A stretch of DNA of 64,000 nucleotides. It comes from Octopus sinensis. Lineage: Eukaryota. The position numbers and the translations under genes are program-made. Under the pieces are notes generated by a model. The model worked only from the letters and a program-made list of their open reading frames with translations, was not told the origin of the DNA and did no database searches. The stretch covers positions 47,194,464 to 47,258,463 of the forward strand of contig NC_043011.1 in the NCBI RefSeq assembly GCF_006345805.1, read 5' to 3'. Within the stretch, counting starts at the first letter, position 1; each line of letters starts with the position of its first letter. Positions 1,256-63,419 of the stretch are shown here, piece after piece.

Positions 1256-1684
1256 GTTTCTGGCACAAATATGTCTTCTAACCAATCAATTTAGTTTACT
1301 AGCTATATACAACATTTGAAGATTTCAATGTGGTACTGCAATCCTGATATTCGTTCGCAGTTTCCTCCACCATTTTAATAATTTTGCCTCTCCACCGAAA
1401 ATTTGTTTACTATGCCACCACTTTGCTTGTTCTACTCCTCCAGTCACTCATTTATCTTTATCAATGAGAGAAGGTGAAAAAATGGTGGGCGTGGTGGATG
1501 AGCATACAATTCCTCAAACTGCCCTCTGTACTAGATTGGTTGTTTGTTTATTAACCTTTCAAGGTGAAAGATGGTATTGATCTCAACAAGATTTCACCTG
1601 AGAAGGTAAAACAGGTGAAATTGTAAACTCTGAAGCACCATTGGGTGGTCCATGGATTCCGACACAAACTCTCTTGTCATCTAC

Positions 1685-1717
<33 letters not shown>

Positions 1718-1893: not shown

Positions 1894-2330
1894 CAACAAA
1901 ACAACAGAAAATGGATAGAAAAAACAATGTTGCCTATGGCTGATACAAATGTAGATTATACTTAGACTCTAGATGTGAAAAATATATCATGAAACAATAT
2001 CAGTTATGTCAACAATTCAATCACTCTAGTCTTAGTGTGTGTAAGAAAAAGAAACTGTGGTAGAGGGGAAAATAGAGAAGAAAATTACATGCACACAAAC
2101 ATACATACATCCATACACACACATATATTCATACGTACATATATGCCTGTGCGTCAAAGATCAATTCTGTATTCATTTTATCATAGTAAACATCGTATAC
2201 ATTTGACACCATAATTCAAAAATGGCTCACCAGTGGCTTGGTTAATGAAATATAATTCGATATTTTCTTATAAATGTCAATTATAAAAACAAAAGGTTTA
2301 CATCTACCCATCTGCCTGCCTGTCCGCCTG

Positions 2331-2361
<31 letters not shown>

Positions 2362-2362
<1 letters not shown>

Positions 2363-2811
2363 GGCATGGCTCGAGAAACACGGGGCCGACCTGCCTGAGA
2401 TGCGGGCAGAGCGACGAAACCGCTCTGCACGCAATCGTGCAGTGTCCAGCAATTTCCCACCTGTGGGCTTATGTCGAACGACTACTGTCACGTGTGGGAC
2501 GAGTCGGTTTATCAGCCGAGTCTATCGTTAATATCGTCACGCCTCCTTCCTTCAAACGGGAATGAAGAGCTATTTTTATCATACTTGTGGCTATGTCGAA
2601 AGAATGTATCTGGTGGACGCGCCTGAAAGGATTAGAGACAAACACTTTCCTCTCTGGTCAATCTCTCATCAACTTCTTCAAGTATCACTTGAAGAAAAAA
2701 GTGAGAGTAGAGAGGCAAGTTTTGTCTAGTGAATGTTTTAAAAAAAGATGGGTGAATGTAGCAAGGATGGCACGTATGAATGACGAAGCCACCTTGACTA
2801 TGATTCTATGA
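2362..2811 (+). pseudogene. 5'-truncated L1/Tx1-clade LINE ORF2 C-terminus (zf-RVT-like CCHC finger)
   Basis: Frame 1 reads RHGSRNTGPTCLRCGQSDETALHAIVQCPAISHLWAYVERLL...KRE*RAIFIILVAMSKECIWWTRL...RWVNVARM; the CxxC-x3-ET-x2-H-x4-C-x6-W pattern is typical of the L1/Tx1 ORF2 end; one in-frame TGA at 2563-2565. Confidence 0.85.
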
Positions 2812-3165
2812 ACCGTAAAAATTAATACAGAGAGTTGCTTATTTGCAAAATTACCTTGTAATTTGTTCTATCTGTGTGCAGCCCTATGTGGCTAATAAAG
2901 AAACATATCTATCTATCTTTTCCTCTTCCCCTTTTTACCCCACCCTCCTTTTTTTTTCATTTCTCTTTTCTTTTGTTCCTTTTCCATTTTTTATTTTTTG
3001 TTCTTTTTTCCCCTTTTACGATCCCTTTTGATCAAAAACCTATGCCACCTTTTTTTTTGTTTCCTTTGATTTTTTGTTTTTTGTTTTTTTTCATCCACCA
3101 AAAGAAAAGCTCTACCTTGTAACTTGTCCCATCTGTGTGCAGCCCTGTGTGGCCAATAAAGAAAC
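2362..3165 (+). mobile_element. Two tandem 3' ends of a Tx1-like LINE inside a (TATC)n array
   Basis: Tail ccttgtaa...agccct.tgtggc.aataaagaaac occurs at 2854-2904 and 3115-3165, each followed by TATC repeats; (CTAT)n also precedes at 2331-2362. Confidence 0.75.
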
Positions 3166-3166
<1 letters not shown>

Positions 3167-3239
<73 letters not shown>

Positions 3240-3244
3240 GTCTG

Positions 3245-3285
<41 letters not shown>

Positions 3286-3294
3286 GTATCTATG

Positions 3295-3327
<33 letters not shown>

Positions 3328-3388
3328 ATCTATCTATCTATCTATCTCTATCTGTCTATCTATCTATCTATCTATCTATCTCTATCTG

Positions 3389-3450
<62 letters not shown>

Positions 3451-7436: not shown

Positions 7437-7920
7437 CTTTTACTTGTTTCAGTCGTTAGACTGGGGCATCCTTTGATGAATTTTGGTCAAATGAATTGCC
7501 CCAATATCAATAATTTTGTCTTAAGCCTTGTACTTATTCTATCAGTCTCTTTTGCTGAACTGTTATGATAGAGGGATGTAAACACATCCCTCTATCATAG
7601 AAGGTGGTGAGCTGGCAGAAACGTTAGCGTACCAGGAGAAATGCTTAGAGGTATTTCGTCTGCCACTACGTTATGAGTTCAAATTCCGCAGAGGTCGACT
7701 TTGCCTTTCACCCTTTTGGGGGGGGGGGTCAATTAAATAAGTACCAGTTACGTACTGGGGTCGATATAAACGACTTAATCAGTTTGTCTGTCTTTGTTTG
7801 TCCCCTCTGTATGTAGCCCCTTGTGGGCAGTAAAGAAATAAGAGGGATGTAAACACATCAACTTCAGTTTTCAAGCAGTTTTGGGAAGAAACACAGACAC
7901 AAAGATAAACACACATGTAG
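7437..7920 (-). mobile_element. SINE family A 3' half, interrupted by a family B copy
   Basis: cttttacttgtttcagtc...gggatgtaaacacatc...tttgggaagaaacacagacac. Confidence 0.7.
7602..7840 (+). mobile_element. SINE family B (tRNA-like head, gtcgactttgcctttca core, Tx1-like tail)
   Basis: Full length; 19-bp TSD agagggatgtaaacacatc at 7570-7588 and 7841-7859. Confidence 0.9.
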
Positions 7921-14358: not shown

Positions 14359-14830
14359 TATATGCATGTATTTGTATGTGTTCTATACATGCATGGCTTG
14401 TAGTAATAGCATATACACTGCATATTTATGACAATATAGTTGCATGGGTGTCTATGTATGCATGTATTTATGTAAGTATGAAGGTATATATATATATATA
14501 TATAAATTTAAACATACATGAATGTTGAGTGCTGTAGATATAAATATGCATGTGTAATTTCGTATGTATGTGCATACGTGTATATATGTATGCATGCTTG
14601 CATGTATGCCTGAATGTGTGTGTGTTTACATGTATGAATGTATGTATGTTTGCATGTATGTCTGTATGTTTGCATGTATCTATGTATTTATGAATGTATG
14701 TATGTTTGCATGCATGTATGTATGCATACATGTATGTATGTATGCATGTGTGATGTTTGCATGTATGTATCTATGTATTTATGAATGTATGTATGTATGT
14801 TTGCATGCATGTATTTATGTTTGTTTGCAT

Positions 14831-14934
14831 GTATATATGTTTGCATGTATGTATGCATTTATGAATGTATGTATATATGTTTGCATGTATGTATGCATTT
14901 ATGAATGTATGTATATATGTTTGCATGTATGTAT
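14831..14934. repeat. 40-bp minisatellite (about 2.6 units) within a degenerate (TATG)n field
   Basis: gtatatatgtttgcatgtatgtatgcatttatgaatgtat repeated exactly. Confidence 0.85.
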
Positions 14935-15167
14935 CTTATTTCTTTATTGCCCACAAGGGGCTAAACATAGAGGGGACAAACAAGGACAGACAAGGAGATT
15001 AAGTCGATTACATCGACCCCAGTGCATAACTGGTACTTAACATATCGACCCCGAAAGGATGAAATGCAAAGTCAACTTCGGCCGAATTTGAACTCAGAAC
15101 CTAACAGCAGTAGAAATACCACTAAGCATTTTGCCAGTGTGCTAACGCTTCTGCCAGCTCACCGCCT
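14935..15167 (-). mobile_element. SINE family B
   Basis: Full length; probable 10-bp TSD catgtatgta (14924-14933, 15170-15179). Confidence 0.9.
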
Positions 15168-15613
15168 TTCATGTATGTAAGCACGCATATATATTTGCAT
15201 GCATGTATATATGTATGTATCACCCTATTTATTTTTATTTTTCTCTCTGTATTTACCTGAGTGTGATGGAGCTGAAATAACAAATACTAAAGTAACTGTC
15301 AATTAGTTTCAATATGTCGATATTAAACTTATATTTCTAAGGTCAGTGGTTATTACTATAAATAATACCATTTCCAGACTGTTAACCTCATCTTATCTGA
15401 GGTACTATCATTATTAGGAAGCAAAAAACAAACAAAAAAAAGAAAAATGCTTTACTGTATTTGTTTCATTTAGCTTTTTATATTCTGATTTGAAATCCAA
15501 CTAATTTTAGTTTCCTTTTTAATCCTTTCAGGGTCAGTGAAATAAAGTACCAGTCAAATACTAGGTTTTTTTTGCCATTAATTAACCCCACCGCCACTTT
15601 TAAAATTGCTCAC

Positions 15614-16034: not shown

Positions 16035-16250
16035 GGTAAGGTGGACAAAATGCTAAGTGGTGGTGAGCATGTTGGCATTTCATCCACCTTTGCATTCTGA
16101 GTTCAAATTCCACTAAGGTTGACTTTGCCTTTCATCCTTTTGGGTTTGATATATTATGTACCAGCTGAACACTGGGAATTGATGCAGTCGACTCGAGCCC
16201 ACTCCAAAATTTCTGGCCATGTGCCTTTAGTATAAAGGCTTATTATTATT
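16035..16250 (+). mobile_element. SINE family B variant (B2 tail ...aaaatttctggccatgtgcc)
   Basis: ctgagttcaaattcc...gactttgcctttcatccttt core. Confidence 0.7.
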
Positions 16251-16635
16251 AGGGGTTAGCCATATTTAAATGGCAAATATACATCACGATGTGTTGCAGC
16301 TACTGTTTATAACTCGCTCTAAGATTTATTATTGCTTGCTTACACTTTTTCGATATCAGTGTCTGTACGATACTGGAAAAAGGATATGTATTTGTGAAGG
16401 GAACCTACTTTTCATTGACAACTGTGATTGTCACATGCTGATGACAGGTCAATAATCAGAAACTCGAGTCCGTGTGTATCATAAGTTGAAGATGGGAAGG
16501 ATGGCTTCCCTTTGCAAATACTGATAGGGCACAGTAATTGTGTCTATAGCCAGCTGGAGGAGGTGTCCTCCTGGGGCTACAAACTACAGTAGCATCCACC
16601 CTTAGGGGTAAGCCATATTTAAATGGCAAATATAC
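16249..16635 (+). mobile_element. 353-bp-period unit with 34-bp terminal direct repeat and internal hammerhead (Penelope pLTR/retrozyme-like)
   Basis: ttaggggt.agccatatttaaatggcaaatatac at 16249-16282 and 16602-16635 (33/34); same family at 24563-25095. Confidence 0.7.
16432..16476 (+). ncRNA. Type-I hammerhead motif
   Basis: CACAUG-CUGAUGA-cagguc aauaauca-GAAAC-UCGA-GUC-CGUGUG: 6-bp stem I, palindromic ACUCGAGU stem III, GUC site; stem II weak. Confidence 0.65.
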
Positions 16636-24562: not shown

Positions 24563-25095
24563 GTGAAGTATATTTACCACTTAAATGTGGCTAACCACTA
24601 AGGGTGGATGCTACTGTAGCTTGTAGTCCCAGGAGGACATCTCCTCCAGCTGGCTATTCACACACTTTCTGTGCCCTATCAGTATTTGCAAAAAAAAAAT
24701 AAAGTGCAAATACTTATAGGGCACAGAAAATGTATCAATAACCAGCTAGAGAAGGTGTTCTCCTGGGGCTACAAGCTTCAGTAGCATCCACCCTTAGTGG
24801 TTAGCCATATTTAAGTGGCAAATATATATTTTTCTTTATTGCCCACAAGGAGCTAAACATAGAGGGGACAAACAAGGACAGACAAGGGATTAAGTCGGTT
24901 ACATCGACCCCAGTGCGTAACTGGTACTTTGTTTATCGACCCCGAAAGAATGAAAGGCAAAGTCGACCTCGGCGGAATCTGAACTCAGGATGTAACAGCA
25001 GATGAAATACCACTAAGCATTTCACCCAGCATGCTAATGTTTCTGCCAGCTCGCCTTTAAGTGGCAAATATACTTCACATTGTCATGCAGCTACT
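24563..25095. mobile_element. Inverted pair of the 16249-family unit, right arm interrupted by SINE B
   Basis: 24563-24690 (minus) and 24706-24826 plus 25056-25095 (plus). Confidence 0.7.
24827..25055 (-). mobile_element. SINE family B
   Basis: 17-bp perfect TSD tttaagtggcaaatata (24810-24826, 25056-25072). Confidence 0.92.
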
Positions 25096-32116: not shown

Positions 32117-32490
32117 AAGGTGGCGAGCTGGCAGATACGTTAGCATGCCAGGCGAAATGCATAGCCGTATTTTGTCTGCCGTTACGTTCTGAGTTCAAAT
32201 TCCACCGCGGTTGACTTTGCCTTTCATCCTTTTGGGGTCGATAAATTAAGTACCAGTTATGCATTGGGATCAATATAATCGACTTGATCCCTTCGTCTGT
32301 CCTTGTTTGTCCCCTCTGTGTTTAGCCCCTTGTGGGTAGTAAAGAAATAGGCATTTCATTTGTCTTTACGTTCTGAGTTCAAATTCAGACAAGGTCGACT
32401 TTGCCCTTCATCCTTTCAGGGTCAAAACATTATGTACCAGTTCCATCCCAAAATTTCGGGCCTTGTACCTAGAGTAGAAAAGGATATATA
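32117..32490 (+). mobile_element. SINE B / B2 head-to-tail dimer
   Basis: B tail aaagaaatag joined at 32350/32351 to gcatttc...ttacgttctgag of a second unit. Confidence 0.8.
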
Positions 32491-34646: not shown

Positions 34647-35067
34647 GCACAAGGCCTGGAATTTTGGAGGAGGAGGAAAGTTGATTACATCGACCCCAGT
34701 GCTTGACTGGTACTTGTTTATCAACCCCAAAAAGATGAAAGGCAAAGTCAATCTTGGCAGAATTTGAACTCAGAACATAAGAATGGGTGAATAATAGTAG
34801 CAATAATAAACTATGTAAAGATCAAGTTCTGTTTGTTGTTAATATTGCCAAAATTACTAAATAGTAGAATAGGTAAACAATCACAGGAAAATATGATATG
34901 TTATTTAGTTACAGCTTTTTATGAGTGAAGTTCAAAACCTGATTATGTTCGTATTTTGCCTTATATTTTGTGCAGAGTCAAACAATCCCTTCATTCAAAA
35001 TCTATGACCCAGTGTCTTGCAAGCTGGCAGAATCATTTGAGTGTTGGACAATATGCCTTGCAGTATC

Positions 35068-35474
35068 TATTTCTTTATTGCCCACAGGGAGGTCTAAAAC
35101 ATAGATAGGACAAACAAAGGGATTAAGTCAATTACATCGACCCCAGTGCGTAACTGGTATTTATTTAATCGACCCCGAAAAGGATGAAAGGCAAAGTCAA
35201 CCTCGGTGGAATTTGAACTCAGAACGTAGCGGCAGACGAAATACCTATTTCTTTAGTACCCACAAGGGGCTAAACACAGAGAGGACAAACAAGGACAGAA
35301 AAGTGGATTAAGTCGATTATATCGACCCCAGTGTGTAACTGGTATTTATTTAATCGACCCTGAAAAGGATGAAAGGCAAAGTTGACCTCAGCAGAATTTG
35401 AACTCAGAATGTTGCGGCAGACGAAATACCACGAAGCATTTCGCCCGGTGTGCTAACGTTTCTGCCAGCTCGCC
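35068..35474 (-). mobile_element. SINE B head-to-tail dimer
   Basis: Junction at 35244/35245; one 13-bp TSD gccttg(c/t)agtatc (35055-35067, 35475-35487) flanks the whole dimer. Confidence 0.88.
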
Positions 35475-35889
35475 GCCTTGTAGTATCACTTCCAACTCAT
35501 TATATTCTGTGTTCAGATTCCACTGACATCAACTTGGTCTATTGTATCTTAAAATTGACAAAAGTACCAATCATATACTGAGTGGATTGCACCAACTAAT
35601 CCTCTCCCATCAAAATTGCTGGCCTCTGAGTTCAAATTCCACATGAAATTGTGGGAACTGAAATCTGAATGTGAGGAGCCAGAACGAATTCTGCAAGGAG
35701 TCTAGCTGACTACATTGACCTTGGTGCTCTGCTGGCATCTGTTCTATCCATCTCAAAATGGAAAAAGTCAAAGTTGATCTCAATGGAATATAAATGCAGA
35801 ATTTGAAGCTGGAAGAAATGCTGCTAAGCATTTTGTCTGATGTGCTAACGAAACTGCCAGCTATACTTCAAAATACACTCAACCATCTT

Positions 35890-36756: not shown

Positions 36757-38276
36757 TTAAACCAAAACAAGATCAACCTATTACTATATACAACAGTATG
36801 TAGTATATATTACAAGAGCATATTTTAGTCTGGTATACATTCAGTGAGTTAAATCAATAGATTATCACCAAATATGTATTTCATAACTTTTGCTAAATAA
36901 ATGTTGAAGCACAAACACAATTGTGAGGAGTTACTTGAGTATTTTTCCAATGTTTTGCAGTGACAATACCTTCCACAACTTTTCATTGAACAGCTTAGTT
37001 TGTGGAACACTTTAATTTTATTTTAATGTTAAAAATCATTTTATTTAAAATGATAGCAGACGTGATAAGCACCAATTTGAAACAGAAATGAGAAATATAT
37101 TTCATATTATATCTATGTCTTGGTCATTGACACAGTTCCATTGCATTATGGTAATGACGATAATTACGCGTAAGCAGCTTTCTATACATTCTACATTATG
37201 AAATCTCTCATTTAAATGAATACATGAAACAAAGACTAAACGCTGTATGTGCTTGAAACACATTAGTTTTGGTATTGCAACAGAACACATTAATTGAGGG
37301 AGAGATCATAAAAATAACGATGATAATGATGAAGGGGATGATGGTATCGTCATTGAAGAAATTATTCAAACATAGAGATTAGGAAATAGAGATAAAAACA
37401 AAGTTTGAAATAGTCCTTATAATGGAAATGATAATAAAACACTTGGATTAATATGTAACTTAAACCCCCAGGACTTGTAGACAGACTCTAAATACATAAT
37501 ATAACATCTCTAAGGATTTCGTATATTTTATGCAGAGTACTTTCATCAACATCATTTTCATCATCGTCACTGTGTGTACATTTTCTGTACTAACATGGCT
37601 TGGAAGGGTCACCACTGTCTAATTCAGTTCCTGTTCAGTTACTAACCTCTTAGATTTGTCAGAGAACCACACCTCACTCTTACAATCCATTTCAGACATG
37701 GCTTCTATGACTGGATGTCTTTCCAAGCGCCAACCACTCTACAGAGAGCCACGAAATTTCATTCTGCAATTCATTGCACCAAAGGTAAATTCAATATTGG
37801 GTTGGTTTCAAACTTTGGCACAAGGCCAGCAATTTTGAGGGTAGGGTTAAATTGATTACATCGACCCAGTACTCAACTGGTACTTTTTTTACTGACCCTG
37901 GAAGGATAACTCACAAAGTTGACCTCGGTGGAGTTTGAACTCAGAATATAAAAGACAGACAAAATGCCGCTTAGTATTTTGCCCAGCACGAGCTAAATTC
38001 ATTATTACCACAGAATAATGTGTGTGTGTGTGTGCATGCATGTACATGTACACATATACACACACACAAAAAAACATTCAGTGGGGATCTGGACATGGCA
38101 GCTCTTTTACATAAAATATAAGTTTCTTCAGAAATATTTGTTGTTGATTTTGAAGGATGTGAGTTGTCAAAGACATCTGTAGAGACTCTTCAAGTACAAC
38201 AACAACAACATCCCCACCACCGTAACAACACAAATAACTACAACAAAAGCAAAAAAAATAACAAAAATTACTGATA

Positions 38277-38334
<58 letters not shown>

Positions 38335-39337
38335 GTAATAATAATAATGACTATGATGACAATGATATAATAATTATTTTTTTTAAATATCTTTTGCTAA
38401 TAATAATGCTGTCTTTGGAATTCCTGCCTTGCTTAATTTTAATACTATTTAATCTATTCATTTTTATGATTAGTGTCTCCGAATTATGAGTCCGGAGATT
38501 AAAAGACTCTAAGACAATGTTCATTTTATAATGCTAAGCTGCCAGAAATTCCATCAGTTGAACAATGTGAAACTGGATGCATGCATGCGTGTGCATATGT
38601 ATGTGTGTGTGTGTGTGAGAGAGTGAGAGAGGCGTGATGAAAGAATTTGTGTGTATGTGTGTATATCTGTCCCTGTGTTTTGTATAATTCAACTAAATGG
38701 AAATAGGTGTGACAGTACAATGCAACTGACAGATATAATTAACAAGGTTACATACACAAACATTCCTGAATACACACACACACACACACACATGTATGTA
38801 TATATATATATATATATATATATAATTTGGATTACAAACCCTTACTAAAATATACTATATAGCCAACCTTTTCTGAGTGATTGTACTCATCAGTAGGGGA
38901 TTAGTAGGGGATTAAAGTTAGCTATACCATTAGGCTATGTAAGCCTAGTTACCATACATACATACATATATATACACATACTGTATGGATGCTAAGTGAG
39001 GATACTTGACTCCACAGATTAAGTGAAATAGGGCTAAGGAAAATGTAATACTGTAAAACTTCTTCAATCCATTTCCACATTGAGAAAAGATTTCCTGATG
39101 TTAATGGTGATGATGATGCTGACAATGATGATGAGAATTAGCAAGTCTTTAAGTAGCCAAATTAATAAGTATACTGACACTGCTTATTACACAGTGTAAC
39201 AAAATTTTAATGTCTTTTGTCTTTTGTTACACTGGGTCCATTATAACCAAGAAGGCTTAACTCTTAAAGTTTAAAAGGCTGTAACCAAGAGGGCTTAACC
39301 CTTAAAGGCCGGTTCACTGAGCTGTAAAATAGATATT

Positions 39338-39569
39338 TATTTTTTTATTGCCCACAGGGGGTGAAACATAGAGGGGACAAACAAGGACAGACAAAGGGAT
39401 TAAGCCAATTACATTGACCCCGTGCATAACTGGTACTTATTTAATCAACTCCAAAAGGATGAAAGGCAAATTCGACCTCAGCAGAATTTGAACTCAGAAT
39501 GCAATGGCAGGAAAAATACCACTAAGCATTTCACCCGGTGTGCTAATGATTCTGTCAGTTCGCCGCCCT
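39338..39569 (-). mobile_element. SINE family B
   Basis: 13-bp TSD taaaatagatatt (39325-39337, 39570-39582). Confidence 0.9.
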
Positions 39570-40433
39570 TAAAATAGATATTATGTAGCAGTCTTAGTTC
39601 ATTATTGTTAATGACAAATGTCCTTTGTTATATGTTAATTTGTAGTCTTAAAATCAACTCCAGACAAGTTCCTGTTTTGGCCTAGCTGGAGTTACTCCTT
39701 CACTACTTCAGTCAATCTAGCTACCGGGAGAGAAATGTTATTGGCGAAAGAAGGGAATTATATTCAGGGAAAGAGTTATATTTCATTTACTGAATCAGAG
39801 GAAACCAAAATACAATATCAATGCCAGCCATTTAAGATTGTCTTTATTCAGTAGAATAAAAAACCCATTTATATTAATTATTGACAGGTAAAATATTCAC
39901 AACTTAAAATACTGCAAATATTTGTCAAGAGAAAAACTCTCTTGTGGTTATATGGTGCATAAAAGCACATCATAGCTATCATTAGTGGCAGACAATCACT
40001 GCTACTTCTGCCACTTGGACTACCAAATCATGTGACTTCAGCCTGATTTGGCTTTTTCAATGACAGACACCAAACAACTGAAAATAACAATAACTAGCGA
40101 TATACATAGAAATATAGAGCCAAAGCAGGTGTTAAGGTTACTAAAGGCTAAAGGGCTTATTTATTTATTAATTATTTAAATTTAAATGTTAAATCATAAT
40201 TAGACTTAAGAACCTTTTGCTATGTTCCAGACACCAGCTTAATAATGATAAAAGTCAATTATTTTATGAAAGCCTTCAAAAATTTTTGATTTCCAGTATT
40301 TCATTACAAATGTGGTTATGAAAGGATTCAATATCCTTCCATTCTTAGGGAACATTTACTTATCAATCTCAGTTCCTTGAATATTTTCTTTTCTATAGTA
40401 TTCTCTTCTTTCCACTCTTTGTCTCTCAGACAT

Positions 40434-48646: not shown

Positions 48647-50498
48647 TAAGTATTAAATATAGGTACAATTGATTCATTAGGAGTTGGAGTACTATGAAGT
48701 TAAAACATTTGTTGCATTAACTTCCATTTCAAATCATCTAGTAAGGCAAACGTAGATATGGGGGTGACTTATGTCAGCCTATTCTTCTCAAGAGATCACG
48801 AAAGCGTTCAATGTCTGCAGCCAGCTATATCAGATTAATGACATAAAAATTGTTGAAACCAACAGCAATAACATCTCTGAGCCTCACTTGTATAAGACAG
48901 ATTAGCCAGGTCAGAAAGACTACAAAGTTGAAAGAAGAGGAATCCTATGAGCCGTCAGTCCTTTGTAGCTGCAATGGTCAGTACTATTATATTTCATAAT
49001 AATCAAATGCCATAACTCTCTTTGGGTTTTATCTGATGTTTTCTTTAATCACTATATCTAATAATTACTCCGAAGTTTGAGACCAGCCGACATTATACGT
49101 TGCGAGTTAATCAAATTTAACGCAGACACAAAACATTATCTAAGATCTTTCAGCAAATAAAATATCAAAGCTAACATTTGATCTCGGATACTTTCCTATC
49201 TTCGCATATCACAAAGATTTTTAGAACATTGAAGGTTCCAGCTGAATATCATTATTACTTACTCTCCATATCTGTTAAGTGTTCTACAAGATAAGTATAC
49301 TCGCAGATCAGTTCAACTATCGGACAATTTCCAAAACTCTTCTGAGTGATTAAGGCTTTGCTTCATACGATGATAGAAATTTCTTTCATGTTATATTCAC
49401 AAAAGCCATTGCAGTGTGTCTCTGTATTTATTAATGCATAAAGCCATTAGCACAAATGTTGCAATACATGCTTTCACATCTACTTATTCACTCTGCAATT
49501 TCATTTGTTATTATTATTATTATCATGCCTATCTGGAGAAGAAAATAATCTTAAAATCAGCCATATGTAAGAGAACAATGCATGCTCTTGGGAAAAGATT
49601 TGTCACTATACTTCCACTCTCTAGAGGTCTGGAAAAGGTGTCAATAACTGATTAAGAAGGCTTCAATGTCTAGGGTAGGAGAAATGAAAGCTGTGATAAA
49701 TATATTTATATTACTTCACCTGAACAATGTAGAGTTGCCTGATTAAGAAAAAAAAATATTCTGAACAATTCTTAACTTTTGTTGACATAGCTGAGCCCTA
49801 CAACCCGTCCTGAAATCCCATTCAATTCTGAAAAAACCATTTCGATAAAAAATACAGCTTTTCAGTTCAAGCTGACTGTCAACCACATTAGACATTATTC
49901 CTAAAGTGAGGAAGGACCTGTAAAAGCTATGAGTACTGACTCCAATCTCTAATAATGAAAAATGGTTTCTAATTTACACATGTGGCTACAGATTTTGGGA
50001 GAGGGAACTGTTGATTAAATCAGCTTCAGTGGTTGACAGATGCTTATTTTACTAACTCCTGGCAAGAGTCAACTTAGAATGTTGAGAGACAAAACTAACA
50101 GCAACTAAACATTTATTCTAATTAAAGTCTACCAAACCACACTTTCGCTAAATGATACCATACCACCAAACCCTGAGATTCACTGGTACTTTATTTTTAC
50201 CTACCCAGTACTTTATTTTATTGATCCACTTACACTAGATAATACTTTCTAATTTTGGCACAGGGCCAGCAGTTTTGGGGTTTTTTTTACATTAGAGGGG
50301 CAAGTTGATTACATTGGCCCTAGTGCTTGACTTGTATTTGTTTCATTGACCCTGAAAGGACAAAAGGCAAAGTCAATGTTGCTGGAATCTGAATGCAGAA
50401 CAAAACCAAAAGAAATGCTGTCGAGCATTTTGTCTGGCATGCAAGTTCATTGCTTTACACTAAATAAGTGTTTCAGATTTTAGCACAAGGCCCGAATT

Positions 50499-50885
50499 TT
50501 ACCACACAGCCACTCCTATAGCTATGTATGTATGTATTTTAAGAATAACATTGTAGGTAGGTGTGAGAGACAGGATCTGACTTGTTTAAACATAAAACAG
50601 GTCAGATATTTGGGATTGGCATGGCCGGTTTAAATGCAAAATGTTCGTCAAAAGAGACCGATAGAATAAGTACTAGGCTTACAAAGAATAAGCCTTGGGG
50701 TCGGTTTGCTCGACTAAAGGCAGTGCTCCAGCATGGCCACAGTCAAATGACTGAAACAAGTAAAAAGAGTAAGAGTATACATCATCAAAATCTCAAAGCT
50801 ATTTAAATAATGCATAATTAATTCAAAATCATGCAAATAAATAAGCATTACATTTGGCAGAGAAATCTGAACGCTAAAGGGTTAA
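50499..50885. mobile_element. Rearranged P2 MITE / SINE A nest
   Basis: SINE head (minus), MITE right half (plus), SINE tail (plus), MITE left half (minus) ending GGG|TTAA. Confidence 0.7.
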
Positions 50886-53268: not shown

Positions 53269-55097
53269 TAGAGATATTATAAATAGTCCTTATGATAAAG
53301 CACCAAGCTAACTGAAATATAGCATAGATATAGATATTAGTCCCTACAATAAGACGTCAAGCCAATTGCAATATAGCAGAGATGTGAATATGCTCAGTCT
53401 ATATACTGAAGATGTGGTTGATAGTTCTCAAAAATTATCATCTTGAGACTATAATTCAAGAACTTTGTTAAAAACAGAAAGACTGATTGCTTACAATATT
53501 TCATAGTTTAATTACATAATTAAAGAAACAATTTCAATTCTATGACATTTTGAAAGAAAAACATTTAAAAAAATACATAACAATAATAATAATAATAATT
53601 ATTATTATTATCATCAGATAAAACAAATATGATCAACAACTGAATCTATAATAATCATATTTCGTAAAACAATATTCCGATCTTTCGATAAATATTTCAA
53701 AGAAAAATAATTAAAAATTGATGAAATATTAACCTTTACTTTGCTATCTTATTACATCATATCCCATGTTGTGTTATATTACAATATATCATATAGCTAA
53801 CAATCACCCATGGTAACAATACTATATTGTTTCTAGATCTGTGGTGCATTACGAATGAATACCTAAATTATTTGATTGCTTAAACATTTGAAGTTACATG
53901 AGAGAACAGGGAAAAGGGCAAAAATCACAAATCACTTATGAATGAACAACAACAATAATAAAGAGAGAGACTATGAATAATATAATAGGCATAACAACAA
54001 ATCAGAGAATAACATAAGACATTATAGAAAGCCCGGTGTTGCTGGTAGCATATTAAAAGGTTAAATAGGCTTTGTAAAGGAAACATATTCATTGTTTTGC
54101 ATTGGAAATTTTTCTAAGAGATAATAATCAAATGGTGTCTTTTTGACATTGCCAACAATTTCAAAACAAAAAAAAAAATAAAACAAATGAAATTTGTCTG
54201 ACATTTGTTGGTTGGATAATAAGCTTTGTTCTATAATAATAATTATAATAATAATAACAATAATAACGATAATAATAATATCAAAAATATTACTGCTAAT
54301 AATAATAAAATATATAATAATAATAATAATATCAATAATATTACTAATAATAATAATAATAAATAATAATGATGATGATAATCACATTCATAAAGAATTG
54401 TAAGAGTAAAAATATAGCATTTATCTTTTGTTTATTTATATTCAGAGCAACATTCTAGTTTATAAACAGTGATCTCTGTTCATTAAGCTTGATGCAGTCA
54501 ATTAGACAATAATGATGACTTAATTGCACACTTGATGTTTTTATTTTGTATAAATTTATATTTAATAGCTGCATAAATGATAATGAAATGAGGAGAAACA
54601 TTACAATATGATACTTTGAATAATATTAATATAGCATGTTAGTACTGTGTTCACTAGAAAGGCAGTAAATTGGCAGAATTGTTTGCAAACCAGGCAAAAT
54701 GCTCAGAGGCAATTTGTTTGTCTTTATGTTATGAGTTCAAATTCTGCCAGGGTCGCTTTTGCCTTTTATCTTTCTGGGGTCAATAAAATAAGTACCAGCT
54801 GAACACTGGGGTTGATGTAATCAACTTAGTCCCTCCACCAAAGCTGCTGGACTTGTTCCAAAATTTGAGGCCAATTTTCTGTTCAGGAGAGTGTTAGACA
54901 AAATGCCATTTTTGAGTTCAAATCCTGTCAATGGGACAATGTGTGTATGGGCATGTGTGTTTACATATGAATAATTTGTTACTGAAGTATCATTTTACAG
55001 CCAGATGCTCACCCTGTCACTAACCTTCGACTGCTTTTCAAGCAAGGGGTCTTTTATTTCACATGTCTTTGAAAGTACGAAGCAAGAAAATGGTTTG

Positions 55098-55510: not shown

Positions 55511-55853
55511 ACGCTGCTTGTATCAGTTTACATAGTAACACACACACACACACACACACATGCACGCACATTACCTATAACAAAACAGGAAGTTTGAAAA
55601 TTCTGTGGCATTATTTATTCACAGTTGCAGATGTTTCATTTGCAAATAAGAATCACAAGGTTGTACATGTCGGATAAACATGTGCTTCAATTGGATTCAG
55701 CTTGGAGTTTACCCTGCCTTCATTATATATAACCAATGCAGCAGATATAAGCAGGGCAAATTTAACAATTCTCTAAAGCTTGAGACAGCCTTAATTGATA
55801 TTCAAACCTTATTGAATGCTCACAACTGTACATGATGGGCTTTAAGAGTTTCT

Positions 55854-56082
55854 TATTTCTTTATCACCCACAAGGGGCTAAACATAGAGGAGACAAACAA
55901 GGACAGACAAAGGGATTAAGTCGATTACATCGACCCCAGTGCATAACTTGTACTTAATTTATCGACCCCGACAGGATGAAAGACAAAGTCGACCTCAGTG
56001 GAATTTGAACTCACAATGTAACGGCAGACGAAATACCGCTAAGCATTTCGGCTGGCGCGCTAACGTTTTGCCAGCTCGCCGC
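55854..56082 (-). mobile_element. SINE family B
   Basis: 14-bp TSD ctttaag(a/g)gtttct (55840-55853, 56083-56096). Confidence 0.9.
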
Positions 56083-56349
56083 CTTTAAGGGTTTCTGTCC
56101 ACCAAATTCACTTTCTATGCTTTTATGGTCAGGAAGCAAATTTCTTAACTACACATCCTTACCTAACAGTATAACTTATGAGATCTAACTGTGGTCTAAA
56201 ATGGTAGAAGTGACATGCTCTGACAAAGTAACTGGTGAACAAGCTTGGTGTTTGTGTGGTGGTGAAAATATCAATGTGACTATGTTGATTGGCCTTGACT
56301 GGTTTTAATTTGCAACATTAGAAATTACAATCATTCAGAAGTTGTTGTC

Positions 56350-62098: not shown

Positions 62099-63419
62099 AT
62101 CAGCACCCACACCATTGATTTTTACATGCCACCTTGTTTTGAGGATATCAATTCTGTTGTGGCAGGTGGGTTTTCTCAAGTCCATCAATGCGCCACGTAT
62201 CTCTCTCCTCAGACACCTCCTTCATAAGGCTTATATAAACACATACAGTGAGACTTTTCACTTTCCATCTACCAATCCCACTCACAAGGCTTTTTGTCAA
62301 CCTAAGGCAACACAGTGGGGACTGAGTCCGGAACCATGTGGGTGAGAAGCCAAATTTTTACCACATAGTCACATCTGCACCTATGACTTATTGTATGATA
62401 TATTCATGGGTATTTTACATTGTAACAATATATCAGAAAGTAAACTATTTTGTCTCTGCAGCATCTTTCTGAATTACACAATGACTCAGAACTACATCAT
62501 GTCAACAATTGCCAAAATAAAACAGGATAAATAAAAGAGCAACAGCAACAAAGACAATAATGATAACCTTTTATTTGCCATAGAGGTGATAAAGACACAA
62601 CAATACAATTAAAATTAAATTAATCCAATAGTTAATTAGAATAACTTACATTTTAAAAAAATTGGGTAACAGCCCTCCCTACATACAAACACAGAATACA
62701 AATAATATGGATGAAATATACAATGGTCTTGTACAAGTGATTTTGATTAAGGCACAAGGACAGCTATTTTGAGGGGAGGGGGAATGAGTTGATACCACTG
62801 ACCCCAGTACTTGACTGGTATTTCATTGGTAGAATTGGAATTCAGAATGTAAAACATTGGAAGAGTTCGAGCAAAGATCGCTTGCTAACGTAACATAGCA
62901 GTCCTGCTTTATGGCAAATGTTGCTGAAATTCAGCCCCAAGAGACATTGTCTCCGGCTGGCTATATTACACAGTCTGTGTCCTTATGCTTTCGAACAGGG
63001 GAATGATCTGATAGAATGATCTGATAAGGTGGTGATCTGATAGAATCCTTAGTGTACTGGAGGAAACAGTTAATGGCATTTCAACCATTTTTGCATTCTG
63101 GGTCCAAATGGCACTGAGGTTCAACTTTGCCTTCCATTCATTCATAATCAATAAAATAAGTACCAGTTTCATACTGAGGTCAATGTACTCAACTTTCTCC
63201 TTCCCACAAAATTTCAGTGTCCTTATTCCATGCTTGCATTGTTCAATTAAATGGAGCCACTTGAAATGGTCGTATTCCACTAATACTTGACCTCCTGTTA
63301 CTTATTTTGATTTTATTCGCCTCACTTCGAGCTGTGCAGATAATACCAAACTGACTTGGTGCCTCAACTCATGTACCTAATTCAACTGAATCTTAATTAT
63401 TTCATATATATATATATAT

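What the first reader, a model, noticed from the sequence alone, without database searches (positions are those of the whole stretch)
3115..3164. SINE family B tail matches the 3' end of the Tx1-like LINE in the same window (candidate SINE-LINE partnership)
Seen: LINE tail ccttgtaacttgtcccatctgtgtgcagccctgtgtggccaataaagaaa (3115-3164) aligns to the family B tail ccttgt---ttgtcccctctatgtttagccccttgtgggcaataaagaaa (reverse complement of 14939-14985) at 40/50 positions, right up to the element end. B copies have 10-19-bp TSDs, as expected for TPRT. Established: stringent SINEs share the 3' terminus of the LINE that mobilises them; known partners are mostly CR1/L2/RTE, and L1/Tx1-tail SINEs are uncommon. 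Inference: this Tx1/L1-clade family drives one of the most abundant SINEs in the region.
Basis: partly seen in the sequence, partly recalled or inferred. Interest (0 to 1): 0.8.

Follow-up and report, generated by a model that had tools for sequence, protein, structure and literature searches.

The report
SINE borrows an L1-type LINE tail
A short mobile element (SINE B) that is common in this octopus-like sequence ends in the same ~50 bases as a nearby L1/Tx1-type LINE, and an intact relative shows those bases are the LINE's real 3' end, so this is a credible but unproven case of a known kind of parasite-of-a-parasite partnership.

Summary
Window 3115-3164 aligns with the 3' end of SINE B at 40/50 positions, right up to the element end (z = 16.7 against shuffles; BLAST E about 1e-7). 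A related element from another sample (L006) has an intact 1148-aa ORF2 (endonuclease, reverse transcriptase, zinc knuckle). Its 316-nt 3'UTR ends in the same tail, so the block is the LINE's own terminus and not a SINE fragment. The last 35 nt are as conserved between LINE lineages (83%) as the coding sequence (80%), while the rest of the UTR is 55-63%. SINE B copies carry 13-19-bp target-site duplications.

Three caveats:
- Every LINE 3' end seen (three lineages) abuts a (TATC)n microsatellite. No SINE B copy does, so the driver may be a sister lineage rather than this family.
- "Tx1" could not be tested. Only L1-group membership is supported.

Verdict: a new member of a known kind, namely a stringent SINE/LINE tail pair, which is rare for L1-group LINEs. 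Mobilisation is inferred, not shown. Interest is moderate.

The parts
2307..2361 (+). Degenerate then pure (CTAT/TATC)n tract that directly abuts the 5' truncation point of the LINE fragment; pure (TATC)7 at 2333-2360
   Evidence: Read from the sequence and regex scan. No LINE tail lies upstream of it.
2362..2811 (+). 5'-truncated LINE ORF2 C-terminus: 149 codons, CX2CX8HX4C zinc knuckle, in-frame TGA at 2563-2565, natural stop at 2809-2811
   Evidence: Translation. Pfam zf-RVT E = 0.001, below the Pfam cut-off. 74% aa identity to P0006/P0172 residues 1000-1148. tblastn with P0172 gives E = 3.6e-67.
2812..2851 (+). Start of the LINE 3'UTR, homologous to L006 UTR positions about 1-43
   Evidence: Alignment read by eye plus (59-66% identity).
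2852..2904 (+).
   Evidence: 90.6% identical to 3113-3165. Aligns to the SINE B consensus with score 22.5, z = 10.6.
2906..2917 (+). (TATC)3 separating the two tail-bearing segments
2918..3112 (+). T/C-rich body of the LINE 3'UTR, probably a second LINE copy 5'-truncated within the UTR
   Evidence: Aligns with L006 UTR positions about 89-262, ending in the shared AAAAGAAAAgCTCT motif. 55-63% identity.
3113..3165 (+). Terminal LINE tail, the genuine 3' end of the LINE; the finding covers 3115-3164
   Evidence: Co-linear with the 3' terminus of the intact element L006. Last 35 nt 83% identical to L006. 40/50 to the SINE B tail.
3166..3450 (+). About 285-bp (TATC)n microsatellite starting immediately after the LINE tail; the only (TATC)n>=4 locus in the window
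   Evidence: The same junction is seen in L006 and L014.
14936..15170 (-).
   Evidence: 92.3% identical to the window consensus.
24831..25055 (-). SINE B copy with 17-bp TSD
55853..56086 (-). SINE B copy with about 14-bp TSD
39337..39570 (-). SINE B copy with 13-bp TSD
7601..7841 (+). SINE B copy with 19-bp TSD and 12 extra snap-back nucleotides at its 5' junction
35068..35479 (-). SINE B-B dimer: full unit 35246-35479 plus a unit truncated at position about 51 (35068-35245); outer TSD GATACTaC
32117..32482 (+). SINE B (32117-32349) fused at the same junction to a 5'-truncated unit with an A-type tail; outer TSD GATATATATAT

Best explanation
Window 2362-3165 holds the 3' part of an L1-group LINE (AP-endonuclease, reverse transcriptase, C-terminal CCHC knuckle) embedded in a (TATC)n microsatellite. 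It is probably two tandem 5'-truncated insertions. The block at 3115-3164 is the LINE's true 3' terminus.

SINE B has a Pol III-type head with A- and B-box-like motifs and a body shared with the window's other SINE family. It carries a ~50-nt 3' module that is homologous to, and co-terminal with, the tail of this LINE group.

The most likely mechanism is the classical 'stringent' one. The ORF2 protein of a LINE of this group recognises the last ~35-50 nt of the RNA, a short G+C hairpin followed by AAUAAAGAAA. It starts target-primed reverse transcription right after that element, and so also copies SINE B RNA in trans, producing 13-19-bp target-site duplications.

Shown: the homology, the co-terminality, that the tail is the LINE's own and is conserved, and the TSDs. 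Inferred: recognition of the tail by the LINE protein, trans-mobilisation, and the direction of transfer (LINE to SINE). The driver is probably a member of this LINE group. Whether it is the particular family in the window is open.
For: (1) Tail match: 40/50, z = 16.7, E about 1e-7, always at the SINE 3' end.
(2) L006 carries an intact 1148-aa ORF2 (Exo_endo_phos + RVT_1 + zf-RVT). Its C-terminus is 74% identical to the window fragment, and its 316-nt UTR ends ...TTGTTTAGCCCTGCGTGGCCAATAAAGAAAT followed by (CTAT)n. Window 2918-3165 is co-linear with that UTR.
(3) A third lineage (L014-16) ends ...AGCACACTGTTGCTAATAC followed by (CTAT)n.
(4) Constraint: between the window LINE and L006, ORF nucleotide identity is 80%, the T/C-rich UTR 55-63%, and the last 35 nt 83%.
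(5) The SINE B tail is as close to the LINE tails (28-29/36) as two LINE lineages are to each other (29/36).
(6) Direction: the GTGGCCAAT motif also ends the more distant LINE L003. The other SINE family shares SINE B's head and body but has an unrelated tail (z <= 1.6). The tail is therefore the swapped-in module.
(7) TSDs of 13-19 bp.
(8) A 3-4-bp hairpin is kept in all tails: AGCC..GGCT in the LINE, GCCC..GGGC in the SINE, and AGCA..TGCT in L014, which is one compensatory C-G to A-T change.
(9) Best solved-structure relative is human L1 ORF2p at E = 1.5e-53, against R2 at about 1e-19.
Against: (a) All four LINE 3' ends (three independent lineages) abut (TATC)n in a fixed phase, and the one 5' junction is also in (CTAT)n. 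None of 8 SINE B copies ends in or sits in (TATC)n. In validated stringent pairs such as UnaL2/UnaSINE1 the terminal repeats are shared, and in SINEU/Tx1-Mar the target preference is shared (PMC4494074).
(b) Identity is only 80%, and the SINE tail mixes states from different LINE lineages.
(c) RNAalifold finds only a 3-bp stem with no covariation across the 11 tails.
(d) Only one LINE locus of this group is in the window, it carries a premature stop, and no age comparison was possible.
(e) The supporting LINE copies come from other samples whose organism is unknown.
Confidence: 0.62

Rival explanations
1. Historical relic. SINE B once acquired its tail from a LINE of this group, but its amplification was driven by an unrelated LINE (RTE, CR1 or Dong/R4, all abundant in octopus genomes) or in a relaxed, tail-independent way. 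The shared tail then has no role in mobilisation.
For: SINE B does not share the LINE's (TATC)n association. Identity is only 80%. Octopus genomes hold far more RTE, CR1 and Dong-R4 than L1-Tx1 sequence (PMC13282606, PMC8967140). In one dimer, SINE B is fused to a unit with a different (A-type) tail within a single TSD pair, which suggests one reverse transcriptase can copy both tail types.
Against: The shared block reaches exactly to the SINE 3' end, where a stringent reverse transcriptase must start. It is also the most conserved part of the LINE UTR. SINE B has no poly(A) or other generic 3' repeat that a relaxed LINE could use.
Confidence: 0.2
2. The 50-nt block is a SINE B fragment that landed behind the LINE, so the LINE's real 3' end is different.
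For: Before outside data were examined, a T/C-rich 200-nt spacer lay between the ORF and the block at 3115-3164, which could have been non-LINE sequence.
Against: The spacer and the block are co-linear with the 3'UTR of an intact ORF2 element from another sample (L006). Two further LINE lineages end in the same motif. The two LINE tails in the window are 90.6% identical to each other but only 76-80% to SINE B, and they share diagnostic states: the AAC/AAT insert and GTGTGCAGCCCT. No SINE body sequence precedes either block.
Confidence: 0.02
3. Reverse direction: the LINE lineage captured its 3' end from SINE B, for example by template switching, rather than the SINE from the LINE.
For: Template switching onto SINE B 3' ends does occur at this locus type, as the dimers with identical junctions show.
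Against: The tail motif is present in LINE lineages that differ by 26-39% at the protein level, and in L003. SINE B's head and body occur with a different tail in the other SINE family. The simplest history is therefore an old LINE tail and a modular SINE.
Confidence: 0.05
4. Chance resemblance of two A/T- and pyrimidine-rich ends.
For: Both ends contain the common AATAAA motif. An 18-mer from the tail finds more than 120 chance matches in 596 Gb of prokaryotic DNA.
Against: z = 16.7 against shuffles. The only matches in 64 kb are SINE B 3' ends and the two LINE tails.
Confidence: 0.01

Closest known systems
UnaL2 / UnaSINE1 of the eel (L2 clade), the experimentally validated 'stringent' SINE/LINE pair (Kajikawa and Okada 2002, as reviewed in PMC3747384)
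   Same: The SINE and LINE share a co-terminal 3' block of tens of nucleotides with a small stem-loop. There is no poly(A). The LINE ends in a short tandem repeat.
   Different: In the eel pair the SINE also carries the LINE's terminal repeat (TGTAA)n, whereas SINE B lacks (TATC)n. The LINE clade differs (L2 versus L1 group). Nothing has been tested experimentally here.
SINEU / Tx1-Mar of crocodilians (PMC4494074)
   Same: A SINE attributed to a LINE of the Tx1 clade. The LINE has a marked target preference.
   Different: That partnership was argued mainly from a shared target preference (Mariner-N4_AMi). Here the tail is shared but the target or terminal-repeat association is not. SINEU heads are derived from snRNA genes.
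L1-clade tail SINEs, e.g. SINEX-3_CR / L1-1_CR of Chlamydomonas and the maize/sorghum pair (PMC3747384, PMC3472496)
   Same: A SINE with an L1-group LINE tail. [quoted passage not shown]
   Different: Those are plant or algal elements and mostly end in poly(A). This one would be an animal (mollusc-like) case ending without poly(A).
Kibi / Koshi and crocodilian Tx1 families that insert into (TC)n, (TTC)n and (TTCC)n microsatellites (Kojima and Fujiwara 2004, via PMC4494074)
   Same: An L1/Tx1-group LINE found inside a simple tetranucleotide repeat, with the repeat on both sides of the copy.
   Different: The repeat unit here is TATC. There are only one 5' junction and four 3' junctions, so target specificity cannot be separated from an RNA-templated terminal repeat. 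Clade membership is untested.
Octopus tRNA-CORE SINEs (OR1/OR2/OK, Ohshima and Okada 1994; 'tRNA-Core' in PMC8967140)
   Same: An abundant octopus-type SINE of about 235 bp with Pol III box-like motifs and a conserved central body.
   Different: Identity with a named family could not be checked because no reference sequence was reachable. I found no published LINE partner for these SINEs in the searchable literature.

Membership tests
Stringent-type SINE/LINE pair (shared 3' tail) | Co-terminal 3' sequence similarity between SINE and LINE beyond chance | tested here: met
   40/50, z = 16.7, E about 1e-7; hits only SINE B 3' ends.
Stringent-type SINE/LINE pair (shared 3' tail) | The shared block is the 3' terminus of full-length, coding-competent LINE copies | tested here: met
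   L006 has an intact 1148-aa ORF2 and a 316-nt UTR ending in the tail. L014 and L003 end in related motifs.
Stringent-type SINE/LINE pair (shared 3' tail) | SINE and LINE share the same terminal short tandem repeat, if the LINE has one | tested here: not met
   The LINE tail is followed by (TATC)n in 4 of 4 ends. This is seen in 0 of 8 SINE B copies.
Stringent-type SINE/LINE pair (shared 3' tail) | Conserved 3' stem-loop supported by compensatory changes | tested here: inconclusive
   A 3-4-bp G+C hairpin is kept in all tails, with one compensatory pair in L014. RNAalifold gives only 3 pairs and no covariation.
Stringent-type SINE/LINE pair (shared 3' tail) | The SINE shows hallmarks of target-primed reverse transcription (TSDs, 5' truncation) | tested here: met
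   TSDs of 13-19 bp in four copies; a slightly 5'-truncated copy and a strongly truncated one.
Stringent-type SINE/LINE pair (shared 3' tail) | Overlapping periods of activity, and trans-mobilisation that depends on the tail | not testable with these tools
   SINE copies are 89-93% identical to a small-sample consensus. There is a single LINE locus in the window.
L1-group LINE (L1 plus Tx1 clades) | ORF2 with an N-terminal AP-type endonuclease, a reverse transcriptase and a C-terminal Cys-His knuckle | tested here: met
   For the relatives P0172, P0025, P0104, P0116 and P0125: Exo_endo_phos + RVT_1 + zf-RVT. The window fragment has the knuckle (E = 0.001, below the Pfam cut-off). The best solved-structure hit is human L1 ORF2p at E = 1.5e-53. 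CR1, L2 and RTE references are absent from the PDB, so this is supportive but not exclusive.
Tx1 clade | RT-domain phylogeny groups it with Tx1L, Keno, Kibi and Koshi rather than with L1 proper | not testable with these tools
   None of the about 270 relatives fetched carries an informative name. No Tx1 reference sequence was available.
Tx1 clade | Target-specific insertion into a repeated sequence | tested here: inconclusive
   The LINE lies inside (TATC)n at one 5' junction and four 3' junctions in a fixed phase. The sample is too small, and the pattern is equally explained by an RNA-templated terminal repeat.
tRNA-derived CORE-SINE | The head is recognisably a tRNA | tested here: not met
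   ARAGORN finds no tRNA in the window. Rfam finds nothing at gathering or E <= 1 thresholds. Only A-box-like (GCTTAGTGG) and B-box-like (GAGTTCAAATTCC) motifs are visible by eye.
tRNA-derived CORE-SINE | A central CORE domain | not tested
   The resemblance of GGGGTCGATAAAATAAGTACC to the MIR core is recalled from memory only. The literature says octopus SINEs are mainly tRNA-Core and tRNA-Deu (PMC8967140).

The most novel reading that the evidence does not exclude
An octopus L1/Tx1-group LINE uses stringent recognition of a ~35-50-nt 3' element and is the driver of a major CORE-type SINE. The LINE itself is confined to (TATC)n microsatellites because its RNA ends in (UAUC)n, which anneals to the nicked target. 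The SINE RNA lacks those repeats and so integrates genome-wide. This would be the first stringent L1-group SINE/LINE pair in a mollusc. It would also be a natural experiment separating template recognition (the tail) from target choice (the terminal repeat).
Probability: 0.25. Interest if true: 0.6.

Novelty: new member of a known kind. Interest (0 to 1): 0.4.

Why it matters
SINEs make up more than 10% of octopus genomes (PMC13282606), and their expansion is an octopus-specific feature. I found no named LINE partner for them in the literature I could search. SINEs with L1-group tails are very rare (3 among more than 800 L1-clade LINEs surveyed, PMC3747384). A validated pair would bear on whether stringent 3'-end recognition is ancestral in the L1 group. 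The mismatch between a microsatellite-bound LINE and a dispersed SINE with the same tail, if confirmed genome-wide, would offer a way to separate template recognition from target choice. It remains a candidate partnership of a well-known type, based on one LINE locus and eight SINE copies.

Tried and rejected
- **More LINE 3' ends from public collections.** None was informative: the search for related loci on metagenome, viral and genome contigs, and DNA-pattern scans for the LINE or SINE tail.
- **18-mer scan of prokaryotic genomes.** It returned only chance matches. The best one, in L044, lies in a bacterial gene.
- **Naming the LINE clade from database names.** None of the relatives carries an informative name.
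- **L007.** Its contig ends 113 nt into the UTR.
- **Structure and tRNA checks.** Rfam and ARAGORN do not recognise the SINE head as a tRNA. RNAalifold on 11 tails gives no convincing structure.
- **Does the other SINE family (A-type tail) also derive from this LINE tail?** Rejected (z <= 1.6).
- **Is the 5' (CTAT)7 the terminal repeat of a further upstream LINE copy?** No tail was found there.
- **Searching papers for SINE or LINE tail strings.** No hits.
- **Other LINE fragments of this group in the window.** None besides 2362-2811.

Full report
**1. What is at the coordinates**

Window 2362-2811 (+) is the last 149 codons of a LINE ORF2. It has a CX2CX8HX4C knuckle, one in-frame TGA at 2563-2565 and a natural stop at 2809-2811. 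Pfam gives only zf-RVT, at E = 0.001 and below the curated cut-off.

The flagged block at 3115-3164 lies 300 nt further downstream, after a T/C-rich stretch. It is followed by about 285 bp of (TATC)n (3166-3450).

That copy starts 41 nt after the stop codon, is 90.6% identical to the terminal one, and is itself followed by (TATC)3. The 5' truncation point of the ORF fragment also abuts (CTAT)7 (2333-2360). This is the only (TATC)n locus with four or more units in the 64 kb.

**2.

SINE B occurs as seven full-length copies and one truncated unit. Together they cover 1.8 kb, or 2.8% of the window, and are 89-93% identical to their consensus.

Its last 50 nt align with 3115-3164 at 40/50 with one 3-nt gap. 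The score is 28.5, against 8.1 +/- 1.2 (maximum 14.5) for 2000 shuffles, so z = 16.7. The BLAST E-value within the window is about 1e-7. In the whole window the LINE tail finds only the other LINE tail and the 3' ends of SINE B copies.

The match runs to within 1-3 nt of the element ends. The SINE ends ...GGGCAATAAAGAAATAA and then the TSD begins. The LINE ends ...GGCCAATAAAGAAAC(T/A) and then TATC repeats begin. TSDs of 17, about 14, 13 and 19 bp were verified.

**3. Is the block the LINE's own end?**

Protein searches with the window fragment and a longer relative found related ORF2 C-termini on short contigs of metagenome and sequencing-run assemblies. These contigs are evidently animal DNA. 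One carries a SINE-like head next to the LINE (L001), and one is labelled as a bacterial MAG.

A member of the closest cluster, P0172, is an intact 1148-aa ORF2 on L006. It contains Exo_endo_phos, RVT_1 and zf-RVT domains and is 74% identical to the window fragment over the last 149 residues. Its 316-nt 3'UTR ends ...CATCGAAAAGAAAAACTCTGCAGTTGTATTTGTTCAGTTCTTTGTTTAGCCCTGCGTGGCCAATAAAGAAAT, followed by (CTAT)n to the contig end.

Window 2918-3165 is co-linear with positions about 89-316 of that UTR, including the AAAAGAAAAgCTCT motif just before the tail. So the T/C-rich stretch and the block together are LINE 3'UTR. The block is the LINE terminus, and a coding-competent copy ends the same way.

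A third lineage (L014-16, one locus in three runs, 61% aa identity) ends ...AGCACACTGTTGCTAATAC followed by (CTAT)n. A fourth (L003) ends ...CCTCTTGTGGCCAATCAAC.... The 'SINE fragment behind the LINE' scenario is rejected.

**4. Signs that the tail matters to the LINE**

Between the window copy and L006, ORF nucleotide identity is 80%, the T/C-rich UTR is 55-63%, and the last 35 nt are 83%. The terminus is therefore conserved like coding sequence.

All tails keep a small G+C hairpin 5-10 nt before the end:
- AGCC[CTATGT]GGCT in the window's proximal copy.
- GCC/GGC in the terminal copy and in L006.
- GCCC[CTTGT]GGGC in SINE B.
- AGCA[CACTGT]TGCT in L014, where one C-G pair has become A-T.

The stem is too short for statistics. 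RNAalifold returns only three pairs and no covariation. I count structure as suggestive only.

**5. Relation of the SINE tail to the LINE tails**

Over the last 36 nt, SINE B matches the window LINE at 28/36 and L006 at 29/36. The two LINE lineages match each other at 29/36. SINE B shares TGTTTAGCCC with L006 and CTTGTGG with L003, and neither state is present in the window LINE. The SINE tail is thus one more member of this LINE group's tail family, not a copy of the window family's tail.

The direction LINE to SINE is favoured for two reasons. The motif is spread over LINE lineages that differ by 26-39% in protein sequence. And the window's other SINE family shares SINE B's head and body (70-74% identity over positions 1-175) but ends in an unrelated tail (...AAAATTTCGGGCCTTGTGCCAAAATTTGAAA; z <= 1.6 against the LINE tail).

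**6. What kind of LINE**

Full-length relatives all have an AP-endonuclease, an RT and a C-terminal knuckle in ORF2s of about 1130-1150 aa. The best solved-structure match is human L1 ORF2p (E = 1.5e-53 over residues 5-883), well ahead of R2 proteins at about 1e-19. That supports the L1 group.

'Tx1' could not be tested. No relative has an informative name and no Tx1 reference was reachable.

Location inside a microsatellite is a habit of Tx1-clade families such as Kibi and Koshi (PMC4494074). The 'Tx group' is defined as target-specific (PMC3747384). L1-Tx1 LINEs are annotated and recently active in Octopus vulgaris (PMC13282606). The label is therefore plausible but unproven.

**7. The main difficulty: (TATC)n**

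All four LINE 3' ends, from three independent lineages, run into TATC repeats in the same phase (tail, one variable base, then TATC...). The only 5' junction is in (CTAT)n, with no further LINE tail upstream. None of the eight SINE B units is in or next to (TATC)n. Their TSDs are ordinary unique sequence.

If the endonuclease were (TATC)n-specific, a SINE it mobilises should share the preference, as SINEU does with Tx1-Mar (PMC4494074). If (UAUC)n were a required part of the template, the SINE should carry it, as UnaSINE1 carries UnaL2's repeats.

Two readings remain:
- SINE B is driven by a sister lineage without this habit.
- Recognition resides in the 35-50-nt element, and the LINE's terminal (UAUC)n merely steers its own cDNA priming to complementary microsatellites, so that a SINE RNA lacking the repeat lands anywhere.

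The second reading is attractive but is pure inference.

**8. Structure of the locus**

Two readings fit.

(a) Two tandem insertions into one microsatellite. The first is 2362-2904, a copy with a short UTR in which about 220 nt between two TTGTAAT/TTGTAAC-type repeats have been lost. L006 has the corresponding short repeat at UTR positions 28-43. The second is 2918-3165, a copy 5'-truncated inside the UTR.

(b) One copy from a master whose UTR carries an internal duplicate of tail plus (TATC)3.

I favour (a), at roughly 2:1, because each tail is followed by TATC repeats exactly as at every other LINE end. Either way the conclusion about 3113-3165 stands.

**9. Comparison with what is known, and novelty**

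SINE/LINE tail sharing is textbook. Most pairs involve CR1, L2 or RTE, and L1-clade pairs are rare: 3 among more than 800 L1-clade LINEs (PMC3747384). SINEU/Tx1-Mar has been added since (PMC4494074).

I found no paper naming a LINE partner for octopus SINEs. Repbase annotations and the closed literature (Ohshima and Okada 1994, 2005) could not be consulted.

I file this as a new member of a known kind. The homology and the 'own terminus' point are solid. The partnership is a reasonable inference at the level of the LINE group (about 0.6) and weak for this particular family (about 0.3). Interest is 0.4.

Noticed in passing
window 2852-2917 versus 3113-3178: The LINE tail plus its TATC repeats occurs twice 260 nt apart (90.6% identity). 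This is either two tandem LINE insertions into one microsatellite, the first with a UTR shortened by about 220 nt, or an internal duplication in the master element.
   Followed up: partly
window 35068-35479 (-) and 32117-32482 (+): Two SINE dimers share the identical junction ...AAAGAAATA|GG(T/C)ATTTC, where a full SINE B is followed by a unit starting at position about 51. One second unit has a B-type tail and the other an A-type tail, and each dimer has a single outer TSD (GATACTaC; GATATATATAT). This suggests template switching onto a SINE B 3' end at a preferred point, or a dimeric source gene.
   Followed up: partly
window 7560-7600: At the 5' junction of the SINE B copy at 7601, 12 extra nucleotides (CCTCTATCATAG) sit between the 19-bp TSD and the SINE. 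They are the exact reverse complement of the target sequence just upstream (CTATGATAGAGG). This is a snap-back or fold-back filler at the second-strand junction.
   Followed up: partly
window 16095-16260, 34678-34780, 37760-37983, 50240-50500, 54657-54880, 63026-63230 and others: A second, older SINE family ('A') shares head and body with SINE B at 68-85% identity. It ends in ...CCCAAAATTTC(G/T)GGCCTTGTGCC(A/T)AAATTTGAAA, which is unrelated to this LINE's tail.
   Followed up: partly
L008 14160-14230: The 3' region of a distant LINE relative (38% aa identity to the window fragment) contains ...TTCGGCCTTGTGCCACATTTGTACTCCCGGTACAATAAATAATA. Its GGCCTTGTGCCA.A.TTTG core resembles the A-type SINE tail (z up to 5). 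It is a weak hint that the A tail also comes from this LINE group.
   Followed up: partly
L008 (period about 7 kb) and L010-L013 (period 6.84 kb): Distant relatives of the LINE (34-41% aa identity) sit in head-to-tail tandem arrays on long contigs of unknown eukaryotic origin, with no microsatellite at the junction. Their 3' ends also show a small hairpin followed by AATAAA (CCTGTA..TACAGGAAATAAA; GTAC..GGTACAATAAATA).
   Followed up: no
P0004; L001-L007, L014-L016: Animal LINE fragments of this group occur in public metagenome assemblies and in a genome bin labelled 'MAG: Herbaspirillum sp.'. This is eukaryotic DNA carried into prokaryote-labelled records.
   Followed up: no
window 14500-14935 and 15171-15220: The SINE B copy at 14936-15170 is inserted into a long imperfect (ATGT/ATGC/ATAC)-rich satellite with a ~60-bp higher-order repeat, which makes its TSD ambiguous.
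   Followed up: no
window 1684-1716 and 1838-1895: (TAG)11 and (ATA/ATT)n trinucleotide runs lie just upstream of the LINE locus. The region around the LINE is unusually rich in simple repeats.
   Followed up: no
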